DNA of 64,000 bases from Octopus bimaculoides (lineage: Eukaryota): contig NC_068988.1 of assembly GCF_001194135.2 (NCBI RefSeq), positions 73,282,008-73,346,007 on the forward strand, written 5' to 3'. Made by a program: the position numbers and the translations under genes. A model generated the notes under the pieces. That model ran no database searches, was not told where the DNA came from, and saw only the letters and a list, made by a program, of their open reading frames with translations. Of the stretch, positions 13,221 to 64,000 are shown in pieces. The first letter of the stretch is position 1. Each line of letters starts with the position of its first letter.

Positions 13221-13655
13221 CCCCAGCACTAGCAATAATTTTATTATATCCACTCAAAACATCATCATTTTGCCGACTGCTGCAATTTACTTGGGTGTCA
13301 GCAATTTGGCTTCTAACACATCTGTGATATTTTTTCTTCTAGTATAGCTGTATTTACTTTTTATTATCAAATCAATTGTTTATAGATGTGTGCACACACA
13401 AGCACAATAATATGCATACCTTATCCTCCTTCCATCTCTCTGTACGTTTATATATGTATATATATATATATATATATNNNNNNNNNNNNNNNNNNNNNNN
13501 NNNNNNNNNNNNNNNNNNNNNNNNNNNNNNNNNNNNNNNNNNNNNNNNNNNNNNNNNNNNNNNNNNNNNNNNNNNNNNNNNNNNNNNNNNNNNNNNNNNN
13601 NNNNNNNNNNNNNNNNNNNNNNNNNNNNNNNNNNNATATATATATATATATACAC

Positions 13656-13687
<32 letters not shown>

Positions 13688-13885
13688 GCACGCACACACA
13701 CACACACACATATACATACATATATATGTATGTATGCATAAGTTTAAATGCATAGATATAAATACACATGTATGTATATGAATATGTGTGTACATATATT
13801 TCATATGCAGGTATGCGTTTAATGTCTATATGTTTACACACATATATATACTTATATATAAATATAAATATGTATGTATATATAC

Positions 13886-13935
<50 letters not shown>

Positions 13936-15397
13936 TGTTGTCATCATTGGCTGTCCATCATTGTTTGATGTTGACTGTTCTGTTAAGAAATCATCTCTGG
14001 TAGGCTAACATGTGGGCTATAAGGCCTGCTCTTGATTTGTCTATAGCTATGTGTGTACTTGTGTAAACAGGAAATAGCTCTTCTTTCAAACATGTTATAT
14101 TAAAAACATGAATGTGTTCAAGCTTCATCTTTTTCATAACTGTTAATAGTTCCTTATTAATCCTTTATGTTTGGTTGGGTAATGTTCCTTATTGTACTGC
14201 TAAAACTACACAAACTGAAAATATGATATACAAGAACCAAATGTGCTATGATTATAAAATGGATGAATATATCGTTAAAAGATTTATAAAGTAGAGCACA
14301 ATCTGTAATACAACTCAGCACAAACTTACAGTTACAATACATTACAATAATACCAGAATGAATCATAACCTTATTCACATGAAACCACAAACACCCTTTT
14401 GTTGATTGAACATGCATTTGTACTAAGGAACCAATGCAACTCATGATAATGCAGTATGCAAAATAAAGTTGGATAGAAAATACTAGTTGACAACGCTACC
14501 ATTTTTTAATAGAATCACACACACACAAAGGAGAAGATGAGAGGAGTAGCTATTGAAGCTTTACTAACAGAAAGACACAAACCTAAATTCATTCCATATA
14601 CATCACCCATAAAAAACATGTTTAAAATCATGAAATCTACCAAGATCTACTATAATGTAATTTTAAATCCAATGTTGAAGATCTTATTAGTTATGAAATT
14701 ATTCCCAAGACCCTTTGCGACTTATCACAGAATGCATGGACCATCACAACTGTTTAATTTTAAAATGTGTGCCATCACAACCGTTTAATTTTAAAATGAG
14801 ATTGTGGAAGCTTTGCAATGTAGGACCAATGGAACATTATACCAATTTAAACAAAAGATTAGTAAAATAATATTTAAAATCCTAAATAAAAAAGATCAAA
14901 CTTAAACATAAATGTGTTCTTAATATGCGTATGAGTGTATCTACATAAATATTTATATATAAGCACACATTTATATGTACACATAAGTTGGCTTTGCAAT
15001 CATGAGGTCCTGGGTTTAATTCTACTGCATGGCATCTTGGGCAATTGTCATTCTCTGTATCCACACAATAACCTGTAGCTTGTGATTGAAATTGGGAAGA
15101 CATTGACTCAGTCAGGTGAGTTGACCTAAATTTCAAACATTGTGTTACACCAAATCTGCCTGACAATTATATTAACAATACACATGTCTGTGGAATGCTC
15201 AGCTGCTTACATGCTAATTCAAGAGTAGATAATTTAGTTAATTGAACTACTGTATTCTCATCACTGACACTGGAAATTCACCATACACATCTACATATAT
15301 TCACAAACTCACACACGCACAGATACCTCTGGGTGTGTGTGTATGTGTATATATGTGTGTGTGTGTGTATGTGTATATATGTGTGTGTGTGTGTATG

Positions 15398-15890
15398 TAT
15401 GAGAGAAAGAAAATGGAATTCATGAGACTTTATTATTCACTACAATCGTTTCAACCCATCATGCACTACTGCCTTGTGGGTGGGATGTTTTACAAAGAGT
15501 TGTGGTGTATCATAGATGCAGATGTGGCTCATAAAGGTGACTTGCCAAAAGGTACTTTGCTTTTTAATCTCTGTTTTGCTTATTTGTATTAGAATACATT
15601 TTGGTAGTTGTAGTTTGCTACTTGTCTACATAAAGAACTGGGTTATAACCCAGTTCTTTGTGTAGATGAGTAGCGAACTACATTCACCAAAATGTATTCT
15701 AAGGCAATAAGTGAAACGGAGATTAAATAGGGAGGTGGCTTTTGACAAGTCTCCCGATGAGACACATATGTACCTATGATGCACGACAGCTGTTTGTACA
15801 GCATCTAACCTGTGAGGTATCAGTGCACAATGGGTCAAAACAATCACTGAATAATAAAGAGTTTTGTGAATTCCATTTTCTTTCACACAT
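15398..15890 (+). other. ~490-bp fold-back palindrome (hairpin 1), centre 15645/15646
   Basis: Perfect 28-bp core AAAGAACTGGGTTATAACCCAGTTCTTT. Arms remain alignable for ~245 bp, out to GAAAGAAAATGGAATTCA / TGAATTCCATTTTCTTTC. Confidence 0.95.
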
Positions 15891-16049
15891 ATTTTATAAA
15901 CTCTACAGACATGAAGGAATTTCTGAAGTAAATCCAGTGGTATTTACATCCATACTGTTGATGACATCAGATAGCCGAATATAGTGTATTGGCTTTAAAT
16001 GGCATACTACAAGATGTATATCTAAATTTAAAATAAATACTTATATACA

Positions 16050-16436
16050 TAAACATTATTGATGTCACATTCATGTGTTTTGCTTAAACACTTTGCAGCA
16101 TTACAGGGAATGTTCCTTTAAGATATCATGCGTTAAAAAATACTGTATATCTACAAATCAGGGTGAAACAAATTGCTCTGTAGGTAAATGAGAATTATGA
16201 ATATCAATATTTTGCTGTTATTTCAGGTCCTTGGCACAATATACTTGGGTCACCCTCAAAACAAATTGCAATCACTGGTCTGGATAGTGTAAATGCTGCT
16301 ATACCACATGGTTTTGAGGAATTCAGTATTTTTTAACACATGATATCTTAAAGGGACTTTCCCTGAATGAAATACTGCAGCTAATAAGCATTTAAACTAA
16401 GCAAATACATTAAGTTTGTGACATCAATAATGTTTA
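16050..16436. repeat. Inverted repeat (hairpin 2), arms 16050-16145 and 16324-16436, ~180-bp spacer
   Basis: TAAACATTATTGATGTCACA / TGTGACATCAATAATGTTTA and CCTTTAAGATATCATGCGTTAAAAAATACTG / CAGTATTTTTTAACACATGATATCTTAAAGG. Confidence 0.92.
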
Positions 16437-16494
16437 CATTATTAGAGCTGCTTCTTTTGTAGAAAGGATTATTATAGCTTCTTCTAACTCAGAA

Positions 16495-16533
<39 letters not shown>

Positions 16534-16549
16534 ATATATTGAAAACATA

Positions 16550-16895
16550 TATCCAATTCTATGTTCCTGACTTTTGTTTCACATATTTTCAAAAGAAAAA
16601 ATGACCACTGAAATACTTAGCCACTTACTTTTAACTAAATGTTAATTATAATTATTCATATCATCATCATCATCATCATCATTTAATGTCAGTTTTCCAT
16701 GCTAGTGTGGGTTGGACATTTTGAAGGTCAAACTGTCCAACCCATACCAGCATGGAAAATGGACGTTAAACAATGATGATGATGTATGAATAATTATAAT
16801 TAACATTTCATTAAAAGTAAGTGACTAAGTATTTCGGTTGACATTTTTTCTTTTAAAAATATGTGAAACGGAAGTCAGTAACAGAATTGAATGTG
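16550..16895. repeat. ~345-bp fold-back palindrome (hairpin 3) with two RTE 3' tails at its apex
   Basis: Apex TTTGA-AGG-TCAAA at 16720-16732. The RTE tail with (CAT)n/(ATG)n is on both arms, and pairing continues ~110 bp into non-TE flank (e.g. AAATGTTAATTATAATTATTCATA / TATGAATAATTATAATTAACATTT, perfect). Confidence 0.95.
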
Positions 16896-19243
16896 GGTTC
16901 AAGCAATGGATATATTTATATTGACTAATGTAAATGGATATGTTTATATTGTCTTATGTAAATGTTTTGATATTTGAAGGATGACAGTGATGATTGTTTG
17001 TACATAGCTGTGTGGGTAAGGTGCTTCCTTCCTCTGACCAAGGTGGATTTAGTAGATGGAAACTGAAAAATACCCATCATATATATGTGTGTATGTGTCT
17101 GTGTACTTTTTTCTTAACATCACACAATGGCTGTAAATGAGAATCATCCACATTCTGCTGAGGTTGTTCTGTTCCAGTCATTTGTGAAATTCATATTTGG
17201 TCATGTATGGAAACAGATAAAGGTTGGCAACAGAAAGGACATCCTGCTGATGGAAAATCTACCTTAACAATTAATGGAAAAGTGGATGTTAAATGATGAT
17301 AACATTCACAATGAAAACAAAAGGAAAATCCTTGAATATAAAACAGACATCATTGTTTTGTTAAAACTTTAGTTAGCATTCATAGTCAGTTTTTGTGTCA
17401 GATTTTCAGCAGATGGGGAGAATTTTTTCCAGAAATATTTTGAGAATTGTCTATTTACAGTATTATTTTTACATTTCTTCATAAATTTACTTATAACAAG
17501 TATATGAAATTTTCAAATCTGTGGTAACTTTTTATTTCACTTATTAATTGGATCTTGTGATACAAAAATTTAATTGTCTATTTCTATGTGGTCAAAAGCC
17601 TCTTCAAATTACTAGAGCATTATGTTGTTGGAGGCTATTTTGTCTCCTGATCACTGTATTCTCAATCATTTTCCCATTTTGAGCAACTCTTCATTACTTT
17701 ATCATTGTGCACATGAAGTGGATGTGTTAACTTGAAATTGGCCAGTAATCTGGACAATTTTTTCACTTTCATTTTTTTATACCTTCAGGTTTTGCAAATC
17801 CTTCAAAATTAATAATTGAAGCAAGGTTTTTTTGCCAAATAACGCTCTTAGCCTTCTTTGAAATTCTGTTAAAAGCTGGTGAATTTGATACCTCTTTAAG
17901 AGTAGGTCCTCCTTCCTTATCTGTTGCTTTAGTAAGACTTTCAATGAGTCTTGCGTATAATATGCCTTAAAAGTTGAATGAATCCCCTGGTGTATTGGCT
18001 GAAGAAGTGAAGTTGTATTTCAACATTGTTTTTAGCAGTGGCAGTGGCAATATTGGTATTGTTGTTTTTAATGTCCACTTTCCTTTGCTTGCATGAATCA
18101 AAAGACATTTGTTGAGGCAGATTTTCCAAGAGCAGATGCTCTTCCAATCTCCAACCTTCACCTGTTTCCAAGCAAGCAAGGTAATTGTCCCTCTTGTCCT
18201 TTGAATGCAAACAATACAATGTTCTCATAGAATGATGCAAACTAACAACACTATTTGTCTGATGGCAATGTTTGTTTGCAAGGACACACACGCACTTATA
18301 TACACACACACTTATATACACACACATATGCATACATGCAATGGACTTCTCTCAGTTTCTGTATATCGAATCCACTCACAAGGCTTTTGAGCTTTTGGCA
18401 GTTAAAAAAAAAGAAGATTTTAGCATTTGGCTATGGTTTTACATGGATGCTAGGACCCATATGGATTAAAAGCATGTGGAAAAAAATAGTTTGCTTTCAC
18501 AATATTCTTTTACCTCAGGGATGAATGGGATGAAAAAAAACAGTCTTCAAAAACTAAAGTTGCAATCCAAGATTTTTTATTGGGTTTGTATATGATTAAG
18601 AGATTAAATATTCTTAAATCTTTAGATTTTCTGAAATATAAACAAATAGTGGTTTGAAATTGCAGTCACCACCAAGTTCTTCTGAAATTTTAAATCCAGA
18701 CATTGACAATTCTTCTCTCACCTTGCAGCTCCTTTATAACATATTTTCCTCCAAAAAAATTCTGTTTCATATATATGTTGAAGACTTGAGAGTGGCATGT
18801 AATAATTCTACTCAATAATTTCCTTAAAATTTTGAAAAGATGCTGCTAAGGTCATCTGTTCTGGCTCTTTCATTTTGTAATTTTATATTATTCCAACTGC
18901 TTACTTGAACCATCCATAACCAACAGCAAACATTTTGCAGTCTTCTCTTTTGTCCTTTACCATTGCAAAAATGGGCTAGGTTTTGTACAAATGGTAACAT
19001 AGGTGGAAATTATATGGAATTTTGATTGATTCATGCTAGTCTAGGAGATTGCATTGTGTGCATTCTTAACTCCAGTCAAATATCTTCTTTAAAAATTTTA
19101 CACCCAAATACACACACACACACTACTCCAAATCCTGGTTAGAGTATCCACATAAGGCTAATTTATACCTGCATCAAATTGCCAGAAGTCAAACCAAATC
19201 ATATTTTGAAAATATCATTATTTGGTTTGACTTCATTATAACT

Positions 19244-19820: not shown

Positions 19821-20139
19821 ATACATACATACATACATACATACATACATACATACATACATAATACATACATATAATAGAAACAGGTTTCAAAGAAAAT
19901 AGACTAAACATGGTATAAATAGGGGAAAAGTAAAAAGAAACAAAGAAAATGGACACTAAGTATAAAAGTAATGGCTTTTTTTTTTATAAAACAAAGATAT
20001 ATACATATGAGACTCATAATAATGATTTTTATACTTCTTAATTCCACCTCAAATCATTTATTTGTATGTATATATATCTTTGTTTTATAAAAAAAAGCCA
20101 TTACTTTTATACCTAGTGTGCATTTTCCTTATGTCTTTT

Positions 20140-20178
<39 letters not shown>

Positions 20179-20439: not shown

Positions 20440-20630
20440 TTCATAGTCTTGCAAGCTGCATGGTCACCTCGGTACATGTGGTAAAGTAGTTGGTGTTAAG
20501 AAGGGCATTTGGTCATAGAAACAATGTCAAAGCTGACACTGGAGCACAATGCAGTCCTTGGGCCTATCAAACTCTGTTAAACCATCCAATCCATACTTGC
20601 ATGGAGAATGGATGTTAAATGATGATGAAG
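20440..20630 (+). mobile_element. RTE 3' UTR terminus with (ATG)n tail
   Basis: GTTGGTGTTAAGAAGGGCAT...CCATCCAATCCATACTTGCATGGAGAATGGATGTTAAATGATGATG. Confidence 0.75.
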
Positions 20631-20639
20631 AGGAGGATA

Positions 20640-29334: not shown

Positions 29335-29780
29335 TGAGCATGATCTTTGCCAGAACCATGGATTGACTCCCATGCTGGTGATACGTGAAAAGCACCATTT
29401 GAGTGTGATTGTTGCCAGCATTGCATTACCGGCACATGTGCTGGTGGCATGTGAAAAACAACATTCAAGCGTGGTCGTTGCCAGTGCCACCGGACTGGCT
29501 CCCATGCAGGTAGCACGTAAAAACACCTTTTGAGCGTGGTCGCTGCCAGAACCACCTGACTGGCACTTGTGCTGGTGGCGTGTAAAAGCACCCACAACAC
29601 TCTCGGTGTAGTTGGTGTTAGGAAGGGCATCCAGCTGTAGAAACTTTGCCAGATCAGATTGAGCCTGGTGCAGCCTCTGGCTCACCAGTCCTCAATCAAA
29701 CTGTCCAACCCATGCCAGCATGGAAAGCGGACGTTAAACAATGATGATGATGATGATGATGATGATGTTGATGATGATAT
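29335..29780 (+). mobile_element. RTE 3' UTR fragment with four ~65-bp tandem units and (ATG)n tail
   Basis: TGCCAG unit starts at 29348, 29413, 29479 and 29544. Ends GGAAGGGCATCCAGC...CCCATGCCAGCATGGAAAGCGGACGTTAAACAATGATGATG. Confidence 0.85.
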
Positions 29781-37658: not shown

Positions 37659-37879
37659 CATTTATATATATATAATATATATGTATATATTATATATATA
37701 TAATATATATGTATATATTATATATATATATTATATTTATATATGTATACATTATATACATATATTATATATATATTATATATATAATATATATATATTA
37801 TATATATTAATAATAATATGACAACAAAAGTATGAATGAGACCTTGATATTATGTAAATAGAGGAATTTATCTATAATA

Positions 37880-39855
37880 TAATATGTGCAAATTAGTCAG
37901 TTGCCATAATAAAACTGAGAGTTTCAGATGTCGGGGCAGAAGTCTGCTCTGGCATCTCATCGGTTATTAAGACAAACAAAAATGCTATGAAAATGATAGT
38001 TAAATAAAGGGAAATTACTATGAAGATGACCGTTATTAAGACCAACAAAAGAGCTATGAGAATGACCGTTAAATAAAGGGAAATTCCCCAAATAGGGAGA
38101 AAGCAAAATTACTCAATGAAGGTAAAAACCACGCACATAGAAGCCACACATGTGTGTATGTACATACACATGCGTGCACACGCACCCATGCGCATATGCA
38201 AATGTGCATATACTCACTCACACTTGCATGAAACACATATTGCACCCCCCCCCACATACACACATATATATGCATCGATACATATGTAAACATACACACA
38301 TACATACCCGCACACATGCACACACACACGTATATATACCCATATTCGCACAATTATGTACATATACACGTCTCTATACATACATGCACAAATATGCAGG
38401 GTGAAAGGTAATGTACAGAAAAAATATATAAAGCAAAAAAAAAAAAAAGATAAATAATATATATAAAAATATGTAAAAATATATATGTAAGAAATGAAAT
38501 GCTTGTATGTGGACACAATATAAAAAGCAGGTTCTATCAGTGATTTTGGGTGGACTAAAATGTAACAAATATTTAGCCATATGTGGACATGATTCAAAAA
38601 GTTCAGTTCTTCAACTTAGATATGTAGCGGTGTTTAAGGAGCTTTTCCAGGTGAGCCATCTTTCCATATCACAAAGACCGCACTTTCCACTGCTGCTGGT
38701 GTAAGGCTTACACTTGGCTAAGATCTTCCAATGAATGTTATAGTTGACATCTTTTTCTTTTAAGGACCATATATAACTGGATAATTTGGTTGTTTTTCTT
38801 TTTTCCCAGTGTCTGAAGCTTAAGGTGAACCTGGCTTTGAAATTCCCCCCTCATATTTCTTATCCTTAGTGGTTGTAAAGTCCTTAGTGGTCTCAGTCAT
38901 GCAAGCTCCATTTAGCGGACACAAATTTTTATCCCTGCATGAACAGCTGGTTTCATTTTGTTGTTTTTATGTATTGTGTGCAATTATATTTTTAAAATTA
39001 GTAATTTTTAGGCTATGCCTGTAAAAAAGCTTCCTATAATTATGATTAGCTGGAAAATGCCTATCTATAAGTGATAAGAAATATTTACTGATATTAAAGG
39101 TAACTTCGGGTGAGTAAGGGGGTGAAAACCAGATAATTTTCCCACTCCTATGTTTCATTTTCTTTATTACAGGACTGGTAACATGTGTATAGGTTATTTC
39201 CTTGATAAATCTACTATCTTTCAGAGCTTTATTATATATTGGGGCAACACTATTAGAAATGTTTCTATCAGAGGAGAGGCTAGGAATTCCCTTGCTAATT
39301 TTTCTAAATAAGTTCTTAAACACTATGGGGTGGGGACCTTCATTAATATAACTAATATGCAGGAACCTACATTAATATAACTAAGTATATCGTTGGGCAT
39401 ATTTGTGCATGTGTGTATAGAGACGTGTATATAAACATAATTGTGCGTGTATGAGTATATATACATATGTGTGTGCGGGTCTGTATGTGTGTATGTTTAC
39501 ATATGTATGGATTCCTACATATATATATATATATGTGTGTGTGTGGGGGGCTGTGCATGTATGTGTTTCACGCGAGTGTGAGTGAGGATATGCATATATG
39601 CACATGCATGTGGGTGGGTGTGCACACATGTGTATGTACATGCGCGCATACCCATATTCCATGAGTGTGGTTTTACCTTCTTCGAGTAATTTTACTTTCT
39701 CTCTATTCAGGTATTTCCCTTTATTTAACAGTCATTTTCATAGCATTTTTGTTTGTCTTAATAAGTGACGAGATGCTGGGGGAGACTTCTGCCCCAACAT
39801 CCGAAACTCTGAGTTTTATTATGACAACTGACTAATTGTCTCATATTATATTGTG
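37880..39855 (-). mobile_element. Penelope-like element (thumb + GIY-YIG remnants, 39330->38570) bracketed by ~500-bp inverted repeats
   Basis: Minus ORF LSSDRNIS..VAPIYNKALKDS...KIIWFSPPYS...KYFLSLIDRHFPANH, then CSCRDKNLCPLNGAC. 37880-38400 is the reverse complement of 39395-39855. Confidence 0.85.
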
Positions 39856-49789: not shown

Positions 49790-49877
<88 letters not shown>

Positions 49878-50135
49878 GTCAAAATTAAAAGAAGAGTGCC
49901 ATTTGTTATCTGGTGAACGATATTTCGACATCTCGTGTGTCTTCAACTGGTTCAAAAAATAAATTTGTCAATCTACTTCATTTTGGTTAATATAGAAAGT
50001 AGATTGACAAATTTATTTTTTGAACCAGTTGAAGACACACGAGATGTCGAAATATCGTTCACCAGATAACAAATGGCACTCTTCTTTTAATTTTGACTCT
50101 ATATCTTCAGGAGGAGTTACCTCAATCCTTTCTAT

Positions 50136-50172
<37 letters not shown>

Positions 50173-57089: not shown

Positions 57090-57280
57090 GTTAGAAGCAT
57101 GAAAAAAGTACCTAGTACACTGTGTAAAGTCATTGGCACTAGGAAGGACATCAAGCCATAGAAACTATGCCAAAGAGAACTTTGGAGCTCAACATGGCCT
57201 TGCAGATTGTCAGTTTTCATCAAACTATCCATTCCTTGCCAGCATGGAAAGCAGATGTTAAATGATGATAATGATGATTT
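57090..57280 (+). mobile_element. RTE 3' UTR terminus with (ATG)n tail
   Basis: AGTACACTGTGTAAAGTC..AGGAAGGACATC..GCCAGCATGGAAAGCAGATGTTAAATGATGATAATG. Confidence 0.75.
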
Positions 57281-63029: not shown

Positions 63030-63240
63030 AAGTACTAGGTAACTTCATTGGTGCTTTATAAAAAGCATGCAGTACACTCTGTAAAATAACTGGCAATAGG
63101 AAGGGCATCTATCCATAAAAACCATGCCAAAGCTGACAGTAGAGTTTGGTGCAGTCTTCTGGGTTACTAGCCACTGTCAAAGGTCAAACCCATGTCAGCA
63201 TGGAAAATAGACATCAAATGATGATGATGATGATGATGAC
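63030..63240 (+). mobile_element. RTE 3' UTR terminus with (ATG)n tail
   Basis: GCAGTACACTCTGTAAAA..AGGAAGGGCATC..CCCATGTCAGCATGGAAAATAGACATCAAATGATGATG. Confidence 0.78.
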
Positions 63241-64000
63241 GAAACCAACATGTTAACAATAATCTTTTCCATATAAGCTGGGTAGACAGAATTTACAGAA
63301 TGACAAATAATGTCATCTTGTATATGAGACAAATGAAGAAAGACATATCAAATATGTTCCTAAATTATGAATGCTAATCAATTGTCATAACTGCAGTAAA
63401 ATATTGGTTTCACTTTTTGGCACAAGTCCATCAAGTTCAGGAAAGGGTAAATCAATTATATTGCACCCAGTACTCATCTAGTACTTATTTTATCAACCCA
63501 GAAAGGGATGAAAGTCAAAGTTGACCTTGGCAGAATTGGAACCCAGAACGTAAAGATAGACAAAATGCCACAAAGCATTTTACCTGATTTGCTAACAATT
63601 CTGCCAGCTTGCTGCTTTACTGAAGTAAAATATTAATTTTCATATATAATTAGTCTTTTCCCAAACTTAGATACTCATAGGGATGATATTTAAGCAGTTT
63701 CCATAACATAAAGCAGATAAGATTAATTGCCTCTGAATAAGATGCAAATTTCAGTTTGGTGGCATTCTGCCCGTATTTATATACCAATAATGTATGAGAT
63801 GCAATGTGGTTCATTGAGTGAAGGGTGAATTAATGAAATGTGTAGTACACGTAATACATAGTGCTTTCAGAAAACAGTTTTTCTGAGATGGGCAGATCTT
63901 CTCAAGAACCTCATATCACCAGACATTTTTGTCCATTGTCATCTCCACCATCAGAATCAACATCTTGAAATCAACTCTCACCACTTATCTTATGTCATCT

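What the first reader, a model, noticed from the sequence alone, without database searches (positions are those of the whole stretch)
15398..16895. Three consecutive long fold-backs in 1.5 kb: candidate structured 3' UTR module
Seen: three unrelated inverted repeats (15398-15890, 16050-16436, 16550-16895) occupy most of this interval, separated by only ~160 and ~115 bp. A (GT)n tract at ~15333-15397 could also pair with (AC)n at ~16498-16529, enclosing the first two. I saw nothing this dense elsewhere in the window. Inference: either a dsRNA-rich regulatory cassette (editing, nuclear retention, Staufen-type localisation, siRNA source) on a transcription-factor mRNA, or a local hotspot of snap-back duplication.
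Basis: partly seen in the sequence, partly recalled or inferred. Interest (0 to 1): 0.7.

Follow-up and report, generated by a model that had tools for sequence, protein, structure and literature searches.

The report
Three old fold-back duplications near KLF
Downstream of the last exon of an octopus KLF transcription-factor gene lie three real but unrelated DNA palindromes of different ages; they look like decaying by-products of snap-back DNA copying rather than a built-for-purpose RNA module, and whether they are transcribed could not be tested.

Summary
FB1 (15398-15891), FB2 (16050-16436) and FB3 (16554-16889) are strong fold-backs, with RNA folding z-scores of -25, -13 and -29. They are unrelated in sequence. 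Three of the window's five such palindromes fall within 1.5 kb (simulated p about 0.002).

The window is octopod DNA rich in transposable elements and microsatellites. FB1 starts 2.2 kb after the stop codon (13220) of a KLF last exon.

FB3 shows its origin. Its centre is two head-to-head copies of the last ~57 nt of an octopus SINE, both cut at the same SINE position. Their (GAT)n tails point outward, followed by ~105 bp of co-duplicated flank. This is one inverted duplication, not two SINE insertions.

Arm divergence differs between the three (K2P 0.26, 0.17, 0.12; roughly 37, 24 and 17 My), so they arose as separate events.

None has a convincing target-site duplication. No second copy exists in the 126 kb of DNA on hand (about 106 kb of it octopod). 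Palindrome ends abut microsatellites more often than chance (p about 0.0005).

Best reading: a local hotspot of snap-back or fold-back duplication, decaying almost neutrally. The 3' UTR cassette idea is untested, because no reads or orthologous loci were available. Its only support is a G:U excess in FB1. Interest is low to moderate.

The parts
13032..13220 (+). Context: last coding exon of a KLF-family gene (zinc fingers 2-3, stop codon at 13218-13220). No upstream KLF exon is in the window.
   Evidence: ORF. Best hits are KLF 5/6/7/luna-type C2H2 proteins at 88-93% identity. Regex scans for finger 1 found nothing.
15333..15394 (.). (GT)n/(GTAT)n microsatellite abutting the left end of FB1. 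About 9 nt of its mirror image (CACACATAT) sit at the right end of FB1.
   Evidence: TRF; sequence; arm alignment.
15398..15891 (.). FB1: a 494-bp palindrome with no spacer. The arms are 15398-15645 and 15646-15891. It is the oldest of the three.
   Evidence: 78% arm identity, K2P 0.264, z = -25. G:U 25 vs A:C 11 on the + strand. + strand RNA folds at -277 kcal/mol and - strand RNA at -230 kcal/mol.
16050..16436 (.). FB2: a 387-bp fold-back. The arms are 16050-16160 and 16309-16436, around a ~148-nt unpaired loop. Its ends read TAAACATT...AATGTTTA.
   Evidence: 85% arm identity with indels, K2P 0.172, z = -12.8.
16498..16529 (.). (CA)16 microsatellite between FB2 and FB3. It can pair with the (GT)n at 15333-15394.
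   Evidence: TRF. 30 GT:AC pairs in the MFE fold. It is one of 20 AC/GT microsatellites in the window.
16554..16889 (.). FB3: a 336-bp palindrome with a 3-nt loop (16725-16727). Each arm consists of ~105 bp of non-repeat flank, a (GAT)n tail and 57 nt of SINE 3' end.
   Evidence: 89% arm identity, K2P 0.122, z = -28.6.
16668..16724 (-). Left-arm copy of the octopus SINE 3' end, in minus orientation, with its (CAT)n tail complement at 16656-16682. It is truncated at the same SINE position as the right-arm copy.
   Evidence: BLAST to the fuller SINE copy at 29560-29765: query position 297 (= window 29696) maps to 16724 and to 16728.
16728..16784 (+). Right-arm copy of the SINE 3' end, in plus orientation. 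Its (GAT)n tail starts at about 16773 and points outward.
   Evidence: 94% identity to the copy at 29696-29745.

Best explanation
The three fold-backs are independent DNA-level inverted duplications. They formed at different times (roughly 37, 24 and 17 million years ago on a published octopus TE clock) in DNA rich in microsatellites and repeats, 2.2-3.7 kb downstream of a KLF stop codon. Since then they have decayed more or less neutrally.

Mechanism (inferred): a broken or stalled 3' DNA end folds back on itself or switches to the complementary strand. It copies 110-250 nt in reverse and is then rejoined. This leaves a segment next to its own reverse complement with little or no spacer.

For FB3 the event involved a retroposon. 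The symmetry centre lies exactly at the 5'-truncation point of a SINE 3' fragment, the SINE tails point outward, and ~105 bp of DNA beyond the tail was copied too. That layout is expected if a target-primed or break-primed SINE cDNA end snapped back and copied itself and the flank it was attached to.

The clustering is best explained by a persistently fragile spot. The flanking (GT)n/(CA)n tracts, and the first palindrome itself, would provoke further breaks.

If a transcript crosses them, each would form 110-245 bp of imperfect dsRNA and would be an ADAR or Dicer substrate. That would be a by-product, not the reason they exist.

Shown: the anatomy, the different divergences, the lack of target-site duplications or second copies in the sample, the clustering, and the microsatellite association. 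Inferred: the mechanism, the neutrality and the fragile-site cause.
For: FB3 anatomy:
- Both SINE fragments start at the same SINE position, next to the 3-nt loop.
- Their tails point outward, and ~105 bp beyond the tails is also palindromic.
- The rest of the SINE is absent on both sides.

Timing and decay:
- Arm K2P distances are 0.264, 0.172 and 0.122, which means separate events. A fifth palindrome in the window (49878-50098) has 100% identical arms, so the process is ongoing.
- Arm identities of 78-89% match the decay of nearby dead SINE/LINE copies.

Not obviously mobile elements:
- There is no second copy of FB1, FB2 or the non-SINE part of FB3 in the window plus L001-L003, 126 kb.
- There is no target-site duplication beyond a self-complementary TA in FB1 and FB2, and none in FB3. 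By contrast, a real TIR element in O. bimaculoides locus L001 (about 11790-12720, arms 82% identical) still shows a clean 8-bp TSD, CATCCCAG.
- A published O. vulgaris annotation lists 65 MITE-finder 'families' with 65 insertions among recently active elements, that is, single-copy fold-backs (PMC13282606).

Location pattern:
- Three of 10 palindrome ends abut a microsatellite, against 0.14 expected (p = 0.00045).
- Three of five palindromes lie within 1.5 kb (p = 0.002).

Known mechanisms that give this product:
- Replication template switching makes perfect hairpins (PMC10710096; PMC8794818).
- LINE-1 TPRT ends yield inverted duplications and foldback junctions that hold truncated, tailed insertions (bioRxiv 10.1101/2024.12.14.628481).
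Against: - Genome-wide copy number could not be measured. 126 kb would miss any family with fewer than about 20,000 copies, so FB1 and FB2 could still be low-copy MITEs whose TA...TA ends are Tc1/mariner-type TSDs.
- No outgroup or empty site was available, so neither the ancestral arm nor in-situ origin is shown for FB1 and FB2.
- No SINE target-site duplication or endonuclease site was recognisable at FB3.
- The G:U excess on the KLF-sense strand in FB1 (25:11; a 47 kcal/mol strand difference) is not predicted by pure neutral decay.
- The clustering could equally reflect selection for several hairpins.
- The ages assume arms that were identical at birth and no gene conversion between them.
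Confidence: 0.55

Rival explanations
1. The fold-backs are three insertions of non-autonomous DNA transposons (MITEs or foldback elements with long terminal inverted repeats). They would have been mobilised in trans by Tc1/mariner-type or other transposases, and landed near each other in a permissive, gene-flanking region.
For: - All three have long terminal inverted repeats and sizes of 336-494 bp, typical of MITEs.
- FB1 and FB2 can be read as elements flanked by TA...TA. Tc1/mariner is the most abundant recently active DNA-transposon group in O. vulgaris (PMC13282606).
- The outer 18-20 nt of the FB1 and FB2 arms are perfectly conserved between arms.
- True long-TIR elements exist in O. bimaculoides (L001).
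- The estimated ages overlap published TIR and other TE expansion waves.
Against: - No second copy was found in 126 kb.
- A TA at both ends is automatic for any palindrome ending in TA, and FB3 has no TSD at all.
- FB3 is built from a truncated SINE end plus unique flank, which points to an in-situ or one-off duplication.
- The termini match no superfamily motif I recognise (from my own knowledge; not tested against a library).
- FB1 and FB3 are palindromic right to the centre with a 0-3 nt spacer, which is unusual for elements derived by internal deletion of an autonomous transposon.
Confidence: 0.25
2. Whatever their origin, the hairpins lie in an extended 3' UTR of the KLF mRNA and are kept by selection as a dsRNA module. 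Possible roles are ADAR editing or sponging, nuclear retention, Staufen binding, or an endo-siRNA/hpRNA source.
For: - The fold-backs lie on the sense side, downstream of the KLF stop codon, with no intervening gene detected.
- In silico the three hairpins fold independently and very stably.
- FB1 keeps more pairing on the + strand than on the - strand (G:U 25 vs A:C 11, p = 0.03; -277 vs -230 kcal/mol).
- Clustering has p = 0.002.
- In O. vulgaris most A-to-I editing is in introns and 3' UTRs, where hairpins are enriched (PMC9699675).
Against: - There is no transcription evidence.
- FB1 begins 2,178 nt after the stop codon, against a median octopus 3' UTR of 350-380 nt.
- Three canonical poly(A) hexamers precede the cluster.
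- Arms have decayed to 78-89% identity. FB2 and FB3 show no strand bias (4:5 and 6:6).
- The FB1 bias does not survive correction for five tests.
- No Rfam family reaches its gathering score; only generic hairpin matches to unrelated miRNA models appear on both strands.
- The arms have no homology to any gene or TE in the sample that an siRNA could target.
Confidence: 0.1
3. The palindromes are artefacts of assembly or library preparation, such as chimeric inverted reads or mis-joined scaffolds.
For: - The window comes from a gapped, scaffolded assembly with seven N runs.
- One palindrome elsewhere in the window (49878-50098) has 100% identical arms.
Against: - The arms of FB1-3 differ at 11-22% of sites and by several indels. 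No artefact that copies one read in reverse would produce this.
- No N run lies within or next to the cluster.
Confidence: 0.02

Closest known systems
Template-switch mutations that create perfect hairpins during DNA replication (PMC10710096; PMC8794818)
   Same: - A single event places a reverse-complement copy next to its source.
- The result is a stem with little or no loop, no target-site duplication and no second genomic copy.
   Different: - Described events are mostly tens of nucleotides long; here the arms are 110-250 nt.
- The switch points cannot be mapped here because no outgroup was available.
LINE-1 TPRT-associated inverted duplications and foldback junctions that contain truncated, polyadenylated insertions (bioRxiv 10.1101/2024.12.14.628481)
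   Same: FB3 has a 5'-truncated retroelement 3' end at the fold-back centre, its tail pointing outward, and the adjoining genomic flank duplicated in inverted orientation.
   Different: - The described cases are somatic or experimental events in human cells, many of them leading to large chromosomal foldbacks.
- FB3 is a small (336 bp), germline-fixed, ~17-My-old event in an octopus. It involves a SINE with a (GAT)n tail, and no TSD or endonuclease site is recognisable.
MITEs and foldback transposons
   Same: - Size of 0.3-0.5 kb.
- Long terminal inverted repeats.
- AT-rich sequence.
- Location near a gene.
   Different: - No convincing TSD.
- No other copies in 126 kb.
- FB3 is visibly assembled from a SINE fragment plus unique flank.
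Inverted-repeat SINE pairs (IRAlu-type) in 3' UTRs, which are edited by ADAR and can cause nuclear retention or Staufen binding (PMC11263572; otherwise my own knowledge)
   Same: If transcribed, FB3 would present two SINE ends paired as dsRNA downstream of a coding region.
   Different: - IRAlus arise from two independent insertions of whole SINEs hundreds of bases apart.
- FB3's two copies share one truncation point and co-duplicated flanks, so they come from a single duplication.
- 3' UTR membership and editing are untested.
Drosophila hpRNA loci (long inverted repeats that yield endo-siRNAs; from my own knowledge)
   Same: Hairpins several hundred nucleotides long, sometimes several at one locus.
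   Different: - hpRNAs are inverted duplicates of a target gene's sequence and are defined by 21-nt small RNAs.
- No target homology was found here, and small-RNA data could not be consulted.

Membership tests
MITE / foldback DNA transposon | Terminal inverted repeats | tested here: met
   All three have them. This is trivially true of any palindrome.
MITE / foldback DNA transposon | Target-site duplication flanking the element | tested here: inconclusive
   FB1 and FB2 show only TA...TA, which is self-complementary and part of the palindrome. FB3 has none. A genuine TIR element in L001 of similar arm divergence keeps an 8-bp TSD.
MITE / foldback DNA transposon | Multiple dispersed copies in the genome | tested here: inconclusive
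   There are zero further copies in the window plus L001-L003 (126 kb). No whole-genome search was possible with these tools.
In-situ inverted duplication (template switch or fold-back priming) | A segment directly adjoining its own reverse complement with a minimal spacer | tested here: met
   FB1 has a 0-nt spacer and FB3 a 3-nt spacer. FB2 has a 148-nt loop, so the feature is weaker there.
In-situ inverted duplication (template switch or fold-back priming) | One arm is ancestral local sequence and the other is absent in an outgroup | not testable with these tools
   No orthologous locus could be fetched. Exact-protein look-ups of window ORFs failed, and the homology search returned no octopus KLF.
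Retroposition-associated foldback | A 5'-truncated retroelement 3' end with its tail at the junction, tail distal to the centre, and flank co-duplicated | tested here: met
   FB3 only: both SINE fragments begin at the same SINE position at the centre, (GAT)n tails point outward, and ~105 bp of flank is palindromic. FB1 and FB2 contain no recognisable retroelement.
Retroposition-associated foldback | Signs of target-primed insertion (a TSD after the tail, an endonuclease site) | tested here: not met
   The 21 nt after the tail have no better match in the left flank than in 34% of random windows.
IRAlu-type inverted SINE pair | Two independent SINE insertions in opposite orientation | tested here: not met
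   The two copies share an identical truncation point and co-duplicated non-SINE flanks.
Structured 3' UTR element of the KLF mRNA | Lies within the mature transcript | not testable with these tools
The distance from the stop codon is 2,178 nt, against a median octopus 3' UTR of 350-380 nt.
Structured 3' UTR element of the KLF mRNA | Pairing maintained by selection (covariation, or a sense-strand G:U bias) | tested here: inconclusive
   FB1 shows 25 G:U vs 11 A:C on the + strand (p = 0.03). FB2 shows 4:5 and FB3 6:6. Covariation needs orthologues.
Known RNA families (Rfam 15), including miRNA precursors | Score at or above the family gathering threshold | tested here: not met
   The whole window gives 0 hits at gathering. 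Below threshold, only generic hairpin matches to unrelated, mostly plant, miRNA models appear, on both strands.
hpRNA / endo-siRNA locus | Arms derived from a target gene; 21-nt small RNAs | tested here: inconclusive
   Translated arms have no relative at E <= 1 among 5.8 billion proteins, and there is no DNA match in the sample.

The most novel reading that the evidence does not exclude
Octopus break repair or LINE machinery regularly creates long, perfect hairpins next to microsatellites. This locus has accumulated three of them on the sense strand of a long KLF 3' UTR isoform, where they are retained as an ADAR/Dicer-engaging dsRNA module. Under this reading, FB1's sense-strand G:U excess is the trace of selection for pairing.
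Probability: 0.08. Interest if true: 0.7.

Novelty: new member of a known kind. Interest (0 to 1): 0.25.

Why it matters
As it stands this is ordinary repeat biology: decaying palindromes in repeat-rich octopus DNA.

Two points give it some value.

- FB3 is a clean, germline-fixed example of a fold-back with a truncated SINE end at its centre. That product has so far been described mainly for LINE-1 in human cancer and cell models. Together with the palindrome-microsatellite association, it suggests a testable source of new hairpins in cephalopod genomes.
- Coleoid transcriptomes are unusually heavily A-to-I edited, mostly in intronic and 3' UTR hairpins. Knowing how such hairpins are made, and whether any are retained by selection, bears on where ADAR substrates and new small-RNA genes come from.

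If the cluster proved to be transcribed with the KLF mRNA and conserved, it would be a good model locus.

Tried and rejected
I therefore did not try read laying with run ids from elsewhere.

2. Fetching the same or orthologous locus.
- Exact look-ups failed for the KLF-exon ORF, two FB1 ORFs and ten further window ORFs.
- The KLF homology search returned only short ORFs from other animals, with no octopus protein.

3. Finding family members at the protein level. A concatenate of all open frames of FB1-3 gave no hit at E <= 1. This negative result is weak, because the LINE search shows that the database holds annotated O. bimaculoides proteins but apparently no ORF-called octopus contigs.

4. 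Enlarging the octopus DNA sample.
- LINE proteins gave two O. bimaculoides loci (L001, L002).
- They also gave one non-octopus locus (L003, 69% LINE identity).
- None holds a fold-back copy.

5. Metagenome scan with a two-anchor SINE pattern. It returned 16 chance matches, with no SINE homology and GC content up to 65%.

6. Shared ancestry of the palindromes. Apparent shared A-rich motifs (AAAGAAAATGGA) are not significant.

7. SINE target-site duplication at FB3. Not significant.

8. The (GT)n:(AC)n outer stem as a designed feature. Rejected, because such microsatellites occur every ~3 kb in both orientations.

9. Assembly artefact. Rejected because of arm divergence.

10. tRNA-like heads in 13-19 kb. 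None found.

Full report
**What the window is**

The window has 35% G+C and seven N runs. Microsatellites occur about every 750 bp (83 tracts, 5.5% of bases). It also carries degraded LINE, SINE and Penelope-like/GIY-YIG remnants.

A LINE reverse-transcriptase fragment from the window has Octopus bimaculoides proteins as its best named relatives. Two loci fetched from the O. bimaculoides assembly GCA_001194135.2 carry the same LINE family at 87-90% nucleotide identity. The window is therefore octopod, most likely O. bimaculoides or a close relative.

On the + strand, 13032-13220 encodes KLF-type zinc fingers 2 and 3 followed by a stop codon. No upstream KLF exon lies in the window. The cluster starts 2,178 nt downstream of that stop codon.

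**Checking the observation**

All three fold-backs are real and sit at the stated places.

| Fold-back | Coordinates | Structure | Arm identity | RNA fold |
|---|---|---|---|---|
| FB1 | 15398-15891 | palindromic end to end, no spacer | 78% over 244 aligned sites | MFE -277 kcal/mol, z = -25 |
| FB2 | 16050-16436 | outer ~110 bp pair around a 148-nt loop | 85% | z = -13 |
| FB3 | 16554-16889 | 3-nt loop | 89% | z = -29 |

- The three are unrelated to one another.
- In a fold of 15250-17000 each forms its own hairpin, and the flanking (GT)n pairs with the (CA)n over 30 bp.
- AC/GT microsatellites occur 20 times in the window in both orientations, so I give that outer stem no weight.
- Elsewhere the window has only two comparable palindromes, at 19929-20143 and 49878-50098.
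- Three of five falling within 1.5 kb happens in 0.2% of random placements. This is a post hoc figure.

**Anatomy**

FB3 is the most informative fold-back.
- Its core, 16668-16724 (-) and 16728-16784 (+), is the last ~57 nt of an octopus SINE. A fuller copy of that SINE lies at 29560-29765 and ends in (GAT)n.
- Both fragments begin at the same SINE position, and that position is the centre of the palindrome.
- The tails point outward, and a further ~105 bp beyond each tail is also palindromic.
- The missing 5' part of the SINE is on neither side.
- Two independent SINE insertions cannot produce this. One inverted duplication of a segment (SINE end, tail, flank) can.

FB1 abuts (GT)n on its left, and about 9 nt of the mirror-image motif lie at its right end.

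In this window, three of the ten palindrome ends abut a microsatellite, against 0.14 expected (p = 0.00045).

**Ages**

Kimura two-parameter distances between arms are:
- FB1: 0.264
- FB2: 0.172
- FB3: 0.122
- 19929 palindrome: 0.125
- 49878 palindrome: 0

With the calibration used for O. vulgaris repeats (JC 0.09 = 25 My, 0.2 = 56 My; PMC13282606), and assuming arms identical at birth, this gives about 37, 24, 17, 17 and 0 My. The cluster was therefore built in separate events, and palindrome formation continues in this genome.

**Transposon or in-situ duplication?**

- None of the three has a second copy in the window or in L001-L003, 126 kb in all.
- FB1 and FB2 end in TA...TA, which fits a Tc1/mariner TSD. 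It is also automatic for a palindrome ending in TA.
- FB3 has no TSD.
- As a yardstick, a genuine long-TIR element in L001 (about 11790-12720), with arms as diverged as these (82% identical), still shows a clean 8-bp TSD, CATCCCAG.
- A curated O. vulgaris annotation lists 65 MITE-finder 'families' with 65 insertions among recently active elements. Single-copy fold-backs are therefore common there.
- Sample size limits this test. A family of fewer than about 20,000 copies would be missed, so a MITE origin for FB1 and FB2 remains a live rival (0.25).

**Mechanism**

Two published processes give this product.
- Replication template switching creates perfect hairpins in one step (PMC10710096, PMC8794818).
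- LINE-1 target-primed reverse transcription ends are remodelled into inverted duplications of adjoining DNA, and into foldback junctions that contain truncated, tailed insertions (bioRxiv 10.1101/2024.12.14.628481).

FB3 has the layout of the second process: truncation point at the centre, tail outward, flank copied. No insertion TSD is recognisable, however.

For the cluster I infer a persistently fragile spot. Microsatellites and long palindromes are both known to stall forks and provoke breaks (PMC3855049, listed). The first palindrome may therefore have encouraged the later ones. This step is inference.

**The 3' UTR cassette idea**

It could not be tested.

Indirect points against it:
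- The distance from the stop codon is six times the median octopus 3' UTR of 350-380 nt (PMC9699675).
- Three AATAAA/ATTAAA hexamers precede the cluster.
- The arms have decayed about as much as neighbouring dead repeats.
- Rfam gives nothing at gathering thresholds.

One point in favour: in FB1, arm mismatches that remain G:U on the KLF-sense strand outnumber those that become A:C by 25 to 11 (p = 0.03). The + strand RNA is 47 kcal/mol more stable than the - strand RNA. FB2 (4:5) and FB3 (6:6) show no such bias, and the result does not survive correction for five tests.

It is already known that octopus editing concentrates in intronic and 3' UTR hairpins. Even if these fold-backs are transcribed, they would be further examples of a known class unless they prove to be conserved.

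**Verdict**

- The regulatory-cassette reading remains possible but has almost no support.
- Novelty: new members of a known kind.
- Interest: 0.25.

Noticed in passing
window 49878-50098 (flanks 49790-49877 and 50138-50172): A 221-bp palindrome whose ~100-bp arms are 100% identical. It sits inside an (AAT)n microsatellite, with 41 extra bases before the microsatellite resumes. Part of that 41-bp stretch is an inverted copy of the loop sequence (AATATAGAAAG...). This is either a very young fold-back event or possibly an assembly artefact.
   Followed up: partly
window 19929-20143: A 215-bp palindrome (arms 88% identical) whose right end runs directly into a (TA)17 tract.
   Followed up: partly
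window 38033-38397 and 39397-39764 (also 37876-38015 and 39713-39852): A pair of ~380-bp inverted repeats (80% identical) about 1 kb apart. They enclose an ORF (38967-39323, minus strand) of the repeat-associated type seen near GIY-YIG/Penelope-like remnants. This may be a Penelope-like element with inverted terminal repeats.
   Followed up: no
L001 about 11790-12720 (O. bimaculoides CM046601.1): A long-TIR DNA element with ~310-bp arms (82% identical) and a clean 8-bp target-site duplication, CATCCCAG. Its interior holds telomere-like (CCCTAA)n repeats. I used it as a yardstick for what a real TIR insertion looks like.
   Followed up: partly
L001 8238-8399: A small palindrome with 46-bp perfect arms. 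Its loop repeats 22 nt of the left flank (GATGCATCCATTCTGATGTCTT at 8180-8201 and 8334-8355). This looks like a complex template-switch product. It is cut off by an N run.
   Followed up: no
window 3953-6620: A degraded non-LTR retrotransposon (endonuclease plus reverse transcriptase, broken by frameshifts), 87-90% identical to copies on two O. bimaculoides chromosomes.
   Followed up: partly
window 6874-7064, 17190-17295, 20486-20638, 29560-29765, 57219-57278, 63097-63242: Copies of one SINE family with a (GAT)n tail. None occurs in the 42 kb of O. bimaculoides loci fetched, so its density is uneven, or the family is specific to a lineage or region.
   Followed up: no
window 13372-13935: A long compound (TA)n/(AC)n microsatellite block with a 158-bp assembly gap, lying 150 bp after the KLF stop codon. 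Any 3' UTR reaching the fold-backs would have to run through it.
   Followed up: no
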